A stretch of 64,000 nucleotides of DNA. Origin: Oikopleura dioica (taxonomy: Eukaryota; Animalia; Chordata). The DNA is taken from the NCBI GenBank assembly GCA_907165135.1, contig OU015566.1, positions 2,976,001-3,040,000 of the forward strand. The letters are read 5' to 3'. The position numbers were made by a program, and so were the translations under genes. How positions within the stretch are numbered: position 1 is the stretch's first letter; every line of letters begins with the position of its first letter. This document shows, piece after piece, positions 52,688 to 55,183 of the stretch. The notes beneath the pieces were generated by a model. The model ran no database searches. It was not told the origin of the DNA and was given only the letters and a program-made list of their open reading frames with translations.

Positions 52688-55183
52688 CTAAATTTTCCTC
52701 CTAAAGTATTTTTCTTTATCAAAAGTCGGAAAATTGCTTTCTTCGAAAAGATCAAATACTTCGTTGATGTACTGATTTCCTTTTTTAATCATCGACTGCG
52801 TAAAATATTCGAAGGATGGCGGATTTTTTGCTCGATGAAATTTCTCGGTTTCTTTTAAATTCTGAAGCTTATAAATAAATTAACAGAGTCCTCTGTTCTT
52901 ACTTTTTCGAGGCATTTAAGTCGTTTCTTTCTGTCTCGGACAATAAAATATTTCTGCTGCTCGATGAAATCAAGAATTTTCTTCATCTCTTGTATCGCAT
53001 CAATTTTCAAATCTTCGTAATAAAAGATGTGCATAGGAAGATTCGTCTCTTCTTTTTTCGCGAGAATTTTCAGCATATGCGAATGCCACCATCTCAAAAA
53101 CTTCGTTCCCTCCTTGACCCATTCTTCTTCCTTGAAAATGGATTCTGAAACTGTTGAAGTGTGGCCATGGCCTTTTCGTCGCTTGAATTCGGCGACAACT
53201 GCGTCGAATGGATTTCGGATGAGAATTAAGTAACCCTTCGCGGAGGAAATACTAGCTTTGTCGATACTATGCGCTTTTTGAAAAAGAGTTGTTCCGTCGA
53301 GAGGGTTTTCATATTCGCCGAGAAAGCCGTCTTCATAAAGAGAGGTGTCGTTGTAGATGCTTCCTGTGAAGATTCCAGTTGCTTTTTCAAGTAGCATTCG
53401 CGTCCAACTAAAAAAATTAGGGGGCCGCCATGGTATCAATTTTACGTGTTACCGCTCCCTGGAAAAGATAAAAGTGGGAAGACCACGAATTCGTTTTTCT
53501 TCCCCATTCTGATCCCCAACTCGCAGGAGTCTTCTTGCGGCATTTCAAAGTCTAGAATCATTTCCTCGCCGAATTTACCGTCTGCGAGTCGTTCAAGAAC
53601 AACATTCGCACTCCAACTTGACGGATTTGAATAAAAGAAGAAGTCGGATCTGAAAGCAAGCTCTTGGGAAACAAGAGAGAGCTGGGTGTCGAAATAATCT
53701 TTGCTGAGTCGCGGTCGAGAGAAGGCTGAAATTTCTTGTTCTTGGATGACCTGAGCTTCTGGATAATATTGAAGGAGGCCGTCGCTTATTTTTTGTAAGA
53801 AGTCGTAGTCTGATGGAGGGCTATTTTTGATTCGAAAGAGACCAAGAAAAAAAGCTTATTTTTGGTCTAAAACTAAGGTACAAGCCGCCGATATTCAGAA
53901 TCATTGGCAATCTGCAAACACTGATTTCAACATGAAATCGTCAGTTTTAGCAAAGAGACCGGTCTTTTCGAACCTTTTACCTGAAAAGAATTATTGATTT
54001 TTGTCCCTTCTTCTTCATTTTGTCGACAACCCACTTGACCAAAAATGATGGATCATTTCGTATCGCTTGAATTTTCTCCAATAACGAATCTTTCTTTTCT
54101 TTCCGAGAATTGATTTTCACGAAATCGTCCATATCATATCTCCAGTGAAGAGCCGCAAAATTCGTAATGTTTTTTGAAAGAAGAAAGTCTTTTGATATTT
54201 CTTGAATTTTTCGCGATCTTCTTGTGCTTCGAATGACTTCGAGAATGATGTCGATGAATTCAAAGTCGTATAGTTTGCTGGCTCTTAACCGATTCTTCGC
54301 TAATTCGTTCTGAAATCAATGATAAAGGTTCAAAATAAATAGTTTAATGTTTACCCAATTGACGATACGAAATGGTTCTTTTAGCATGACACAGCTGATT
54401 TGGTCGTAGCGGGAGAATTGCTTGAAAATTTCATCTTGAAATTCGTTTTTTGGAACATGTAAATCAACTTTCTTTGTTTTGTTATAAGTGGCAAAGTCTA
54501 GGCCAAAATATTTGTAGGTTTGTTTGATATTGCGCTCGCTTTTCCAGTTTTTATGAGTATTGAATATCAACTCAAAGCGGTTATCTTATCATCAGATTTC
54601 ATTTACCGCGGTATTTTTTAAATATAGGAATAAGTTCGTATGAAATCCTTTCCGGGGCAACTTTCATGAATTTTATTTTCAACTGCAATCATTGATTCAA
54701 TCAATGAAGTGTCGAAAATCTCTGATGGTGGAATAACAGCTTTGCCACTTGATGAAAAATGACGAAAAAATGGCGGAATGGCGATCTAAAATTCTCTTCG
54801 AAAGCAAATTTCGAAGAAAAGTTACCTTTCGATTAAGAATTTTCGCAATAAGAAGATTTTCCCTGAACCCTTGAAACTGATTGTTTGGCCCATAAATTAC
54901 AACGGGAATCAGTACATTAGCATTTTTCTCATCGTTTTTATTTGTAAAATCTTCCTTGAGGACAAATTTTATATGTGGCTTACTTTGGCTCATAAAAAAT
55001 TAAGGGTTCCTTTTTGAACTCTATCCGGCTTCAGGAATCCACGGCCTCACTAAGTTGAAGAGCCAAGACCTGAAGAATATCGTTAGCTTCTCTTTTCTCT
55101 TCGTATTCTTGTCGAATTTGAAAAACAAACAGCCATATTAAAAAAAGACTCAGAAAAATTTGATAAAAGACGGGTTTTTCCAT
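52688..55183 (-). CDS. Golgi type II protein: O-fucosyltransferase-like domain fused to a WSCD-type sulfotransferase domain
   Basis: N-terminal TM; YGPNNQFQGFRE..AKILNR, FAALHWRYDMDDF, SLVSQELAFRSDFF..SSWSANV; then in the same exon SFPGSGNT|WTRMLLEKATGIFTGSIY, QKAH, LIRNPFDAVVAEF, YYEDL. Some middle splice sites are unresolved. Confidence 0.8.

What the first reader, a model, noticed from the sequence alone, without database searches (positions are those of the whole stretch)
52688..55183. Single gene fusing an O-fucosyltransferase-like domain to a WSCD-type sulfotransferase
Seen: between ~53700 and 53446 one uninterrupted frame runs from the C-terminal motif of the GT-B O-FucT/POFUT family (SLVSQELAFRSDFFFYSNPSSWSANVVLERL) directly into the PAPS-binding loop (LLSFPGSGNT|WTR). 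Upstream exons give GPNNQ and HWRY motifs and an N-terminal TM anchor. Known: animal POFUT-type and WSCD-type enzymes are normally separate proteins. Inference: a bifunctional Golgi enzyme that adds and then sulfates a sugar (for example sulfated fucose), plausibly for tunicate house or mucus glycans. This is my best candidate for an undescribed system.
Basis: partly seen in the sequence, partly recalled or inferred. Interest (0 to 1): 0.85.

Follow-up and report, generated by a model that had tools for sequence, protein, structure and literature searches.

The report
Fucosyltransferase-like domain fused to sulfotransferase
This Oikopleura dioica gene encodes one Golgi-type membrane protein that joins a divergent POFUT-like glycosyltransferase domain directly to a WSCD-type sulfotransferase domain, an architecture conserved in several paralogs, not found outside larvaceans and not described in the searched literature.

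Summary
On the minus strand, 55183-52688 holds an 8-exon gene of about 675 codons. One exon (53820-53446) runs without a stop from the C-terminal motif of an O-FucT-like domain into the PAPS loop PGSGNT|W.

The C-terminal half is a Sulfotransfer_1 domain. Its named relatives are WSCD1/2 (sialate:O-sulfotransferases), but it has no WSC domains.

The N-terminal half belongs to a large, divergent, larvacean-expanded PF10250 family. Window exons score below threshold. One paralog passes the Pfam cut-off. An AlphaFold model of a fused paralog hits POFUT2, POFUT1 and FUT8 almost exclusively.

The same junction occurs in four paralogs of this genome and in four metagenome sequences. All exons show purifying selection. 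So this is an old, maintained fusion, not an artefact.

None of 49 long sulfotransferase relatives elsewhere carries PF10250. The same N-domain family is also fused to a CHST-type sulfotransferase and to a β4GalT domain.

The RNA runs came from a diverged lineage and gave no verdict on the transcript. The donor sugar, the acceptor and sequential action are all inferred. Two other first-reader notes flagged the same architecture on other pieces of this genome.

The parts
55070..55183 (-). Exon 1: ATG plus a type II signal-anchor (hydrophobic stretch about residues 5-22). Ends in phase 0 at a CAG|GT donor.
   Evidence: In paralog L014 the anchor and the next exon form one open frame. That fixes the acceptor so that exon 2 starts with PHIKF.
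54826..54978 (-). Exon 2: N-terminal motif of the O-FucT-like domain (GPNNQ...LIAKILNRK).
   Evidence: phmmer to the equivalent exons of more than 15 family loci gives E from 6e-18 to 1e-3, including L049. The L049 locus passes the PF10250 cut-off. Paralog exons align to PF10250 positions 11-46.
54638..54785 (-). Exon 3: IAIPPFFRH motif. The 3' end is inferred. No in-frame GT donor precedes the stop at 54620, so a 53-nt GA-AG intron (54637-54585) is proposed.
   Evidence: Paralog L014 needs a 54-nt GC-AG intron at almost the same place. Not verified by RNA.
54355..54584 (-). Exon 4: middle part of the O-FucT-like domain (NRFELIF...FRIVNW).
   Evidence: E = 2.2e-33 to paralog L014. dN/dS is 0.10.
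53981..54309 (-). Exon 5: LHWRYDMDDF motif, equivalent to the H-x-R motif of POFUT1. Ends in phase 2.
   Evidence: Pfam PF10250 at E = 0.084, profile positions 157-212. The family profile aligns HWR to HLR of C. elegans POFUT1 3zy2. dN/dS is 0.13.
53446..53820 (-). Exon 6, the junction exon. It holds the C-terminal Rossmann part and last motif of the O-FucT-like domain (to about 53589), about 21 residues of linker, then the start of the sulfotransferase domain (conserved Cys at about 53525) and the 5'-PSB loop PGSGNT.
   Evidence: Open frame 53855-53445. Paralogs match at 72/50/45% over its full length. Metagenome fragments P0226, P0233, P0231 and locus L025 carry the same junction. dN/dS is 0.04.
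52903..53407 (-). Exon 7: sulfotransferase core (W of the PSB loop, K-x-H, the RNPFD 3'-PB motif, YYEDL).
   Evidence: Pfam Sulfotransfer_1 at E = 1.9e-9, 37.8 bits against a cut-off of 22. 266 representatives match at E <= 1e-10. The nearly invariant columns of WSCD-type relatives are all present.
52688..52861 (-). Exon 8: C-terminal part of the sulfotransferase domain, plus the stop codon (52690-52688).
   Evidence: It matches the C-termini of sulfotransferase relatives P0002, P0005 and P0007 at E from 1e-12 to 2e-10.

Best explanation
The locus encodes one type II (Golgi-type) membrane protein of about 675 residues. An N-terminal signal-anchor is followed in the lumen by a divergent GT-B glycosyltransferase domain of the PF10250 / POFUT-like family. 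That domain abuts, almost without a linker, a PAPS-dependent sulfotransferase domain of the WSCD1/2 type. The glycosyltransferase domain sits where WSCD proteins carry their WSC domains.

Shown: the fused reading frame, both domain assignments, conservation of the fusion in paralogs and in environmental larvacean sequences, and purifying selection on both halves.

Inferred: both domains are active and act in sequence on the same secreted or membrane glycoconjugate. The first would add a sugar from a nucleotide sugar, with GDP-fucose the default guess. The second would sulfate that sugar or a neighbouring one. The likely tissue is the house-secreting epithelium.
For: Fused frame:
- One open frame spans the junction.
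- The only membrane anchor is in exon 1, and the sulfotransferase half has none. Stand-alone paralogs such as L020 carry their own anchor.

Sulfotransferase half:
- Sulfotransfer_1 at E = 1.9e-9.
- 28 of 49 long relatives carry WSC domains.
- Named relatives are sialate:O-sulfotransferase 1/2, also called WSCD1/2.
- The PGSGNTW loop fits the P-x-x-G-x-T-W positions whose alanine replacement reduced WSCD1/2 activity in cells (PMC9304399).

N-terminal half:
- PF10250 is the only consistent Pfam hit across family exons.
- The locus at C5:13269561 scores 37.2 bits, over the cut-off.
- An annotated O. dioica family member, P0224, carries PF10250.
- The AF2 model of fused paralog L016 gives Foldseek hits that are almost exclusively POFUT2, POFUT1, FUT8 and NodZ. 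The Atlas structure search lists mostly the same fold.
- HWR aligns to HLR of POFUT1, and S-W-S to S-T-F-S.

Conservation:
- Four fused paralogs, plus P0226, P0233, P0231 and L025.
- dN/dS is 0.04-0.23 in every exon against paralog L014.

Recurrent coupling of this N-domain with tailoring enzymes:
- A CHST-type sulfotransferase at C2:7.03 Mb.
- β4GalT in P0221 and P0152.

Context:
- GDP-mannose dehydratase is present in the genome.
- wscd1-like sulfotransferases are reported as strongly expressed in giant oikoplastic cells (preprint 10.64898/2026.03.31.715263).
Against: - There is no transcript evidence. All RNA reads laid were under 95% alike and did not cover the junction.
- The window's own N-domain exons are sub-threshold in Pfam (best 12.9 bits). 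Profile hits to POFUT1/2 sequences in PDB are weak (E = 0.1-0.3).
- The fold test was done on a paralog (45% identical in the junction exon), and only for the C-terminal half of the domain.
- PF10250 is not tied to one donor sugar (my knowledge: it includes plant rhamnosyltransferases), so fucose is a guess.
- The exon 3/4 junction needs a non-canonical intron.
- In-frame ATGs in the linker (MILDFEM, MGKKNEF) leave room for a sulfotransferase-only isoform.
- The whole spliced protein was never scored as one sequence.
Confidence: 0.6

Rival explanations
1. The protein is one polypeptide, but the O-FucT-like domain is a non-catalytic recognition module (a pseudo-glycosyltransferase). It would bind a glycan or protein acceptor and present it to the sulfotransferase, taking over the role of the carbohydrate-binding WSC domains in WSCD1/2.
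For: - It occupies the position of the WSC domains in the closest named relatives.
- No WSC match was found in the genome.
- The domain is very divergent from PF10250 (sub-threshold).
- The same N-domain is attached to three different catalytic partners, as a targeting module would be.
Against: - The motifs that hold the nucleotide sugar and the catalytic Arg in POFUT1 (G-x-N-N-Q, H-W-R, S-W-S...ER) are kept in the window gene, in all fused paralogs and in stand-alone members such as P0224.
- Stand-alone family members are numerous, which suits enzymes.
- The N-domain exons have low dN/dS.
Confidence: 0.22
2. The frame is continuous in the genome, but the main products are separate. An internal start or trans-splice site would give a sulfotransferase-only protein, or the upstream part would be made alone. 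The fusion would then be mostly a gene-model artefact.
For: - There are in-frame ATGs in the linker.
- A tandem copy at C1:965402-966291 seems to begin inside the linker remnant (KMILDCEM) and lacks the N-domain.
- My knowledge: O. dioica uses operons and SL trans-splicing.
- No RNA evidence was obtained.
Against: - There is no stop codon between the domains in any of four paralogs or four environmental sequences.
- The linker is conserved as protein and sits in the exon with the lowest dN/dS, 0.04.
- A sulfotransferase starting in the linker would lack the signal-anchor that stand-alone paralogs have.
Confidence: 0.1
3. It is a decaying pseudogene or an assembly artefact.
For: The exon 3/4 boundary has no canonical donor before a stop.
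Against: - All other exons are open with GT-AG introns of 38-160 nt and consistent phases. The total is 2025 nt, or 675 codons.
- dN/dS is well below 1.
- A paralog needs a similar non-canonical intron at the same place.
- The same architecture occurs at independent loci and in independent samples.
Confidence: 0.03

Closest known systems
WSCD1 / WSCD2 (sialate:O-sulfotransferase 1/2; Ertunc et al. 2022, PMC9304399)
   Same: - Type II membrane topology with a C-terminal lumenal sulfotransferase domain.
- 5'-PSB loop PGSGNTW and 3'-PB RNP-x-D.
- About 30-45% identity over the core exon to WSC-carrying relatives.
   Different: - There are no WSC domains. A POFUT-like GT domain of about 370 residues lies between the anchor and the sulfotransferase.
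- The acceptor is unlikely to be known. No sialyltransferase-family match was found in this genome, which is a weak negative.
POFUT1 (GT65) and POFUT2 (GT68), Pfam PF10250
   Same: - GT-B fold of the nucleotide-binding half.
- Motif order G-x-N-N-Q, then H-x-R, then S-x-(F/W)-S...ER, with the Arg aligned to the catalytic Arg region of C. elegans POFUT1.
   Different: - Very divergent: 10-16% identity in structural alignments, and sub-threshold in Pfam for the window's exons.
- Membrane-anchored rather than a soluble ER protein (my knowledge of POFUT1/2).
- Member of a larvacean-expanded family with more than 20 loci. Canonical POFUT-type hits exist separately at C5:12466654 and C2:5239882.
- Fused to a sulfotransferase.
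Other natural two-domain Golgi glycan enzymes, such as NDST (N-deacetylase/N-sulfotransferase) and LARGE (two GT domains). These are cited from my knowledge.
   Same: One polypeptide carries two consecutive steps of glycan building or tailoring behind one signal-anchor.
   Different: The domain pair differs. No published GT65/68-like plus sulfotransferase pair was found. The nearest case seen here is P0138, with WSCD-type sulfotransferase domains plus GT92.
Sulfated-fucan pathway gene fusions in brown algae (Nishitsuji et al. 2019, PMC6418280)
   Same: [quoted passage not shown]
   Different: Those fusions are fucokinase with GDP-fucose pyrophosphorylase, and sulfotransferase with alpha/beta hydrolase. 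Neither joins a glycosyltransferase to a sulfotransferase.

Membership tests
Pfam PF10250 O-FucT (POFUT1/POFUT2-like GT-B) | Profile match over the gathering score (31.5 bits) | tested here: inconclusive
Window exons were scored apart. Only exon 5 matches, at 12.9 bits and E = 0.084, at the right profile positions 157-212. Paralog pieces score 14-30 bits. Family locus C5:13269561 scores 37.2 bits over positions 11-323.
Pfam PF10250 O-FucT (POFUT1/POFUT2-like GT-B) | POFUT-like fold of the nucleotide-sugar-binding domain | tested here: met
   Tested on fused paralog L016, not on the window protein. The AF2 model has pLDDT of 70-95 over most of residues 71-240. All 13 Foldseek PDB hits at E <= 0.001 are POFUT2 or POFUT1; lower ranks are POFUT1, FUT8 and NodZ, with one unrelated entry. 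Best E = 4.5e-5, probability 1.00. The Atlas search lists mostly O-FucT, FUT8 and NodZ clusters.
Pfam PF10250 O-FucT (POFUT1/POFUT2-like GT-B) | Conserved Arg of the H-x-R motif and the C-terminal S-x-F-S...R motif | tested here: met
   The window has LHWRY and SSWSANVVLER. The family profile aligns these to HLR and STFS...RER of C. elegans POFUT1 3zy2. That alignment has a weak E-value of 0.1.
Pfam PF10250 O-FucT (POFUT1/POFUT2-like GT-B) | Use of GDP-fucose and O-fucosylation of EGF or TSR repeats | not testable with these tools
   Needs enzyme assays. Only the presence of GDP-mannose 4,6-dehydratase exons in the genome was shown.
WSCD1/2 sialate:O-sulfotransferases | Sulfotransferase domain with the WSCD-type 5'-PSB (PGSGNTW) and 3'-PB (RNP-x-D) motifs | tested here: met
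   The motif positions match the residues mutated in PMC9304399.
WSCD1/2 sialate:O-sulfotransferases | WSC domains (PF01822) N-terminal to the sulfotransferase | tested here: not met
   No WSC hit in any exon. No six-frame WSC match in the genome, though the control search did not ring either. 28 of 49 long relatives have the domain.
WSCD1/2 sialate:O-sulfotransferases | Single N-terminal membrane anchor (type II) | tested here: met
   There is a hydrophobic stretch in exon 1, and none between the domains. This rests on inspection only; no TM predictor was available.
WSCD1/2 sialate:O-sulfotransferases | 8-O-sulfation of sialic acid on glycans | not testable with these tools
   No Glyco_transf_29 match was found in the genome. 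This is a weak negative that hints at another acceptor.

The most novel reading that the evidence does not exclude
Larvaceans may have turned a divergent POFUT-like glycosyltransferase into the first module of a set of fused assembly-line Golgi enzymes. The same N-domain family is joined to a WSCD-type sulfotransferase (this gene and three paralogs), to a CHST-type sulfotransferase, and to a β4-galactosyltransferase. Each fusion would build and tailor a lineage-specific, possibly sulfated-fucose, glycan on house or mucus proteins without releasing the intermediate.
Probability: 0.3. Interest if true: 0.75.

Novelty: new variant of a known kind. Interest (0 to 1): 0.55.

Why it matters
Glycosyltransferases and glycan sulfotransferases of the animal Golgi are, as far as I know, separate proteins that meet only through co-localisation. 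A natural, conserved GT-sulfotransferase fusion would have three uses:
- It would be a ready-made model for substrate channelling in glycan synthesis.
- It would link an orphan branch of the WSCD sulfotransferases to a defined partner step.
- It points to an undescribed sulfated glycan in the larvacean house, a structure of ecological weight.

The paired fusions (WSCD-type, CHST-type, β4GalT) offer a guilt-by-association route to the function of a large orphan O-FucT-like family.

Tried and rejected
- RNA support. Four runs carrying the same species label were laid at 85% likeness. All reads were under 95% alike and only partly laid, and none fell on 52402-54009. The runs come from a diverged lineage, so there is no verdict.
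- Full-length database relatives. The exhaustive search with exon 7 returned mostly fragments. None of the 150 best hits matched the N-domain exons.
- Word-indexed searches. The paralog ORF and the family profile found only larvacean-like metagenome fragments and one annotated O. dioica protein.
- The genome's own annotation is withheld. I could not see whether the public gene model is fused.
- Sequence-only PDB searches for the N-domain were not significant.
- The PAP_RNA-bind hit on exon 4 (21.5 bits, below cut-off) and the DMAP1 hit of the profile were rejected as chance.
- The brown-alga fusion paper covers a different domain pair.
- A misassembly or pseudogene reading was rejected (see rivals).
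- A single origin of the fusion is not settled. In the sulfotransferase tree the fused copies form two pairs, each next to a sulfotransferase-only copy, with moderate support. The linker remnant in the tandem copy favours loss of the N-domain over two separate fusions.
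Full report
**Organism and locus**

The window is G000:C4:2976001-3040000 of a 64.28-Mb, 19-contig genome. An annotated protein named Oidioi.mRNA.OKI2018_I69...[Oikopleura dioica] (P0224) maps to this genome, with exon matches of 87-99% identity. The genome is therefore O. dioica, Okinawa lineage or very near it. Tiny introns of 38-160 nt fit that.

**Gene model**

All parts lie on the minus strand.

| Part | Coordinates | Notes |
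|---|---|---|
| Exon 1 | 55183-55070 | ATG and hydrophobic anchor |
| Intron 1 | 55069-54979 | Acceptor fixed by paralog L014, where anchor and PHIKF are one open frame |
| Exon 2 | 54978-54826 | GPNNQ |
| Intron 2 | 54825-54786 | |
| Exon 3 | 54785-54638 | IAIPPFF |
| Intron 3 | 54637-54585 | Inferred 53-nt GA-AG intron |
| Exon 4 | 54584-54355 | |
| Intron 4 | 54354-54310 | |
| Exon 5 | 54309-53981 | LHWRY |
| Intron 5 | 53980-53821 | |
| Exon 6 | 53820-53446 | Junction exon |
| Intron 6 | 53445-53408 | |
| Exon 7 | 53407-52903 | |
| Intron 7 | 52902-52862 | |
| Exon 8 | 52861-52691 | Stop at 52690-52688 |

The phases fit, and the exons sum to 2025 nt, or 675 codons. Intron 3 is the only weak point. 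Paralog L014 needs a 54-nt GC-AG intron at nearly the same position.

**The observation**

Frame 2 of the minus strand is open from 53855 to 53445. It carries both the last conserved motif of the N-domain (…SSWSANVVLER) and the PAPS loop (…SFPGSGNT). The Trp of the loop is the first full codon after the 38-nt intron.

About 21 residues separate the last conserved residue of the first domain from the first conserved Cys of the second. Stand-alone family members end some 20-40 residues after the same ER motif. There is therefore practically no linker.

**C-terminal half**

- Exon 7 alone matches Sulfotransfer_1 at E = 1.9e-9, above the cut-off. It also matches cytosolic SULT structures weakly.
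- Against 1.84 billion representatives it has 266 relatives at E <= 1e-10.
- Of the 49 listed relatives of roughly 380 aa or more, 43 carry Sulfotransfer_1, 28 carry WSC domains, none carries PF10250, and one carries GT92.
- Named relatives are sialate:O-sulfotransferase 1/2, also called WSC domain-containing protein 1/2. They include ascidian (Styela clava) copies with WSC domains.
- The nearly invariant columns of these relatives are present in the window gene. They include S-x-PG-x-GNTW-x-R, TG-x-YTGS-x-Y-x-D, K-x-H, R-x-P and a late Cys.
- The loop fits the P-x-x-G-x-T-W positions whose alanine replacement lowered WSCD1/2 activity in cells (PMC9304399).
- The window gene has no WSC domain. 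A six-frame search found none in the genome (a weak negative).

**N-terminal half**

- Window exons taken apart give only a weak PF10250 match, on exon 5 at E = 0.084, though at the correct profile positions.
- The genome holds a large family with the same motif order; the searches gave about 30 exon-level matches spread over roughly twenty loci.
- PF10250 is the only consistent Pfam hit on the family's exons. N-terminal exons match profile positions 11-46, and C-terminal exons match 146-325, at 14-30 bits each.
- One locus read across its intron scores 37.2 bits over positions 11-323, above the cut-off.
- P0224 carries PF10250 in the database.
- Window exon 2 is significantly similar to the N-terminal exons of these loci, with E down to 9e-10 outside its closest paralog. 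Exon 6 is 45-72% identical to the fused paralogs.
- I folded the 281-residue intronless ORF of fused paralog L016, which runs from HWRY to the PAPS loop, using a 15-row family alignment. pLDDT is 70-95 over most of residues 71-240.
- Foldseek against PDB: all 13 hits at E <= 0.001 are POFUT2 or POFUT1. Lower ranks are POFUT1, FUT8 and NodZ, with one unrelated entry. Best E = 4.5e-5, probability 1.00.
- The ESM Atlas structure search gave mostly O-FucT, FUT8 and NodZ clusters, alongside some unnamed ones. The feature search agreed (lead only).
- The family profile aligns HWR with HLR, and S-W-S…ER with STFS…RER, of C. elegans POFUT1 (E = 0.1).
- Canonical POFUT-type genes exist elsewhere in the genome (72 and 64 bits). 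This is an additional, lineage-expanded branch.

**Is the fusion real?**

- The same junction in one open frame occurs at C1:968475 (72% identical), C1:5122601 (50%) and C1:338901 (45%). At the last of these, 281 codons run from HWRY to the PAPS loop without any intron.
- Three different metagenome fragments (P0226, P0233, P0231) and locus L025 show the same junction.
- Against the 72%-identical paralog, dS is saturated (1.2-4.1). dN/dS is 0.23, 0.10 and 0.13 for N-domain exons 2, 4 and 5. It is 0.04 for the junction exon, and 0.08 and 0.17 for the sulfotransferase exons 7 and 8.
- Sulfotransferase-only paralogs carry their own anchor in front of the conserved Cys…GKK-x-EF…PGSGNTW block (L020). 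The window gene has its only anchor in exon 1.
- In the tree of sulfotransferase cores, the fused copies fall in one moderately supported clade together with three sulfotransferase-only copies.
- The tandem sulfotransferase-only copy at C1:0.965 Mb keeps a remnant of the linker. That suggests later loss of the N-domain.

**Transcripts**

The only raw-read RNA runs under the species label come from a diverged lineage. No read was 99% alike, nearly all were only partly laid, and none lay on the junction. This gives no verdict.

**Wider pattern** (seen in passing; it bears on mechanism)

- At C2:7.03 Mb, an O-FucT-like gene runs in frame into a Sulfotransfer_2 (CHST-type) domain at E = 1.4e-16. 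The path goes through an exon with a CHST-like stem and a plausible GT-AG intron.
- Metagenome proteins P0221 (547 aa) and P0152 join the same N-domain (54-59% identical to L016) to Glyco_transf_7N/7C, a β4GalT domain.
- At C1:13.486 Mb, a 672-codon intronless ORF joins a WSCD-type sulfotransferase to a Gal-3-O-sulfotransferase domain.

Larvaceans thus fuse Golgi tailoring enzymes repeatedly. The O-FucT-like domain is paired with two unrelated sulfotransferase families. That argues for a functional link between its product and sulfation.

**Mechanism**

Shown: a single frame, a single anchor, two recognisable catalytic folds with their nucleotide-binding motifs, and selection on both.

Inferred: a lumenal, Golgi-resident enzyme whose first domain glycosylates an acceptor and whose second domain sulfates the product or a neighbouring residue.

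GDP-fucose is plausible as donor, since GMD exons are present and the best structural relatives are all fucosyltransferases. It is unproven, because PF10250 is not tied to one donor sugar (my knowledge). Sialic acid is an unlikely acceptor if the absence of a sialyltransferase-family match is real. A preprint reports wscd1-like sulfotransferases among the genes strongly expressed in giant cells of the house-producing epithelium (10.64898/2026.03.31.715263). It does not mention the fusion.

**Novelty**

No paper linking Oikopleura with WSCD, or describing a glycosyltransferase-sulfotransferase domain fusion of this kind, was found. The brown-alga fusions are different pairs. Automatic annotation of the public gene model may already list both domains, but that record is withheld here. 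Two other first-reader notes flagged the same architecture on other pieces of this genome.

I rate it a new variant of known kinds: a new domain architecture, conserved and multi-copy, with untested function.

**Limits**

All domain evidence rests on single exons, intronless paralog ORFs and database proteins.

Noticed in passing
L008 (G000:C1:13485204-13488653), ORF 2247-229 minus: An intronless 672-codon ORF carries a membrane anchor and a WSCD-type sulfotransferase (Sulfotransfer_1, E = 1e-7). A Gal-3-O-sulfotransferase domain follows (PF06990, E = 1.8e-26). So two different sulfotransferases sit in one polypeptide.
   Followed up: partly
L017 / L032 (G000:C2:7028726-7032298), minus strand: An O-FucT-like gene's last exon runs on into a CHST-like stem. 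Through a plausible 96-nt GT-AG intron it reaches exons with the C-x-P-P-K-C-G|TTNW loop and a Sulfotransfer_2 domain (E = 1.4e-16). This is a second, independent kind of O-FucT-like/sulfotransferase fusion candidate.
   Followed up: partly
L057 (ENA metagenome contig, gene 227-1870) = P0221; also P0152: A 547-residue ORF joins the same O-FucT-like domain (59% identical to paralog L016) to a complete β4-galactosyltransferase domain (Glyco_transf_7N + 7C). It is probably from another larvacean.
   Followed up: partly
P0138 (1144 aa, organism unknown): A relative with Sulfotransfer_1 and Sulfotransfer_3 matches at two separate places, suggesting two sulfotransferase domains, plus a GT92 glycosyltransferase domain (E = 2.4e-34). 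It is another natural GT-sulfotransferase fusion, with a different GT family.
   Followed up: no
G000:C1:965402-966291 (L003/L019): A sulfotransferase-only copy lies in tandem just downstream of the fused paralog at C1:0.968 Mb. It is 71% identical to the window's exon 7. Its first open frame starts inside a remnant of the fusion linker (KMILDCEM) and shows no anchor. It could be a truncated duplicate or have unseen upstream exons.
   Followed up: partly
G000:C1:328936-341035: A tandem cluster holds two stand-alone O-FucT-like genes, one of them the annotated P0224 at 331393-334810. The fused paralog at 338214-341035 follows immediately.
   Followed up: partly
window 54585-54637 (minus): The gene model needs a non-canonical 53-nt GA-AG intron here. 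Paralog L014 needs a 54-nt GC-AG intron at almost the same position.
   Followed up: partly
window 55590-55709 (minus): A Kunitz/BPTI-like exon (…[16 protein letters not shown]…CENACK) lies about 400 nt upstream of the fusion gene's ATG. It is the best-covered part of the stretch in the diverged-lineage RNA runs.
   Followed up: no
window 52255-52520 (plus): A Thr-rich, mucin-like open frame converges on the 3' end of the fusion gene. The RNA reads piled here are low-complexity ACA repeats with many back-joints, so they are not informative.
   Followed up: no
G000, whole genome: There are at least 74 six-frame matches to Sulfotransfer_2 (CHST type) and about 33 to the WSCD-type core. No match was found to WSC or to the sialyltransferase family. 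This suggests a large, reshaped glycan-sulfation toolkit.
   Followed up: partly
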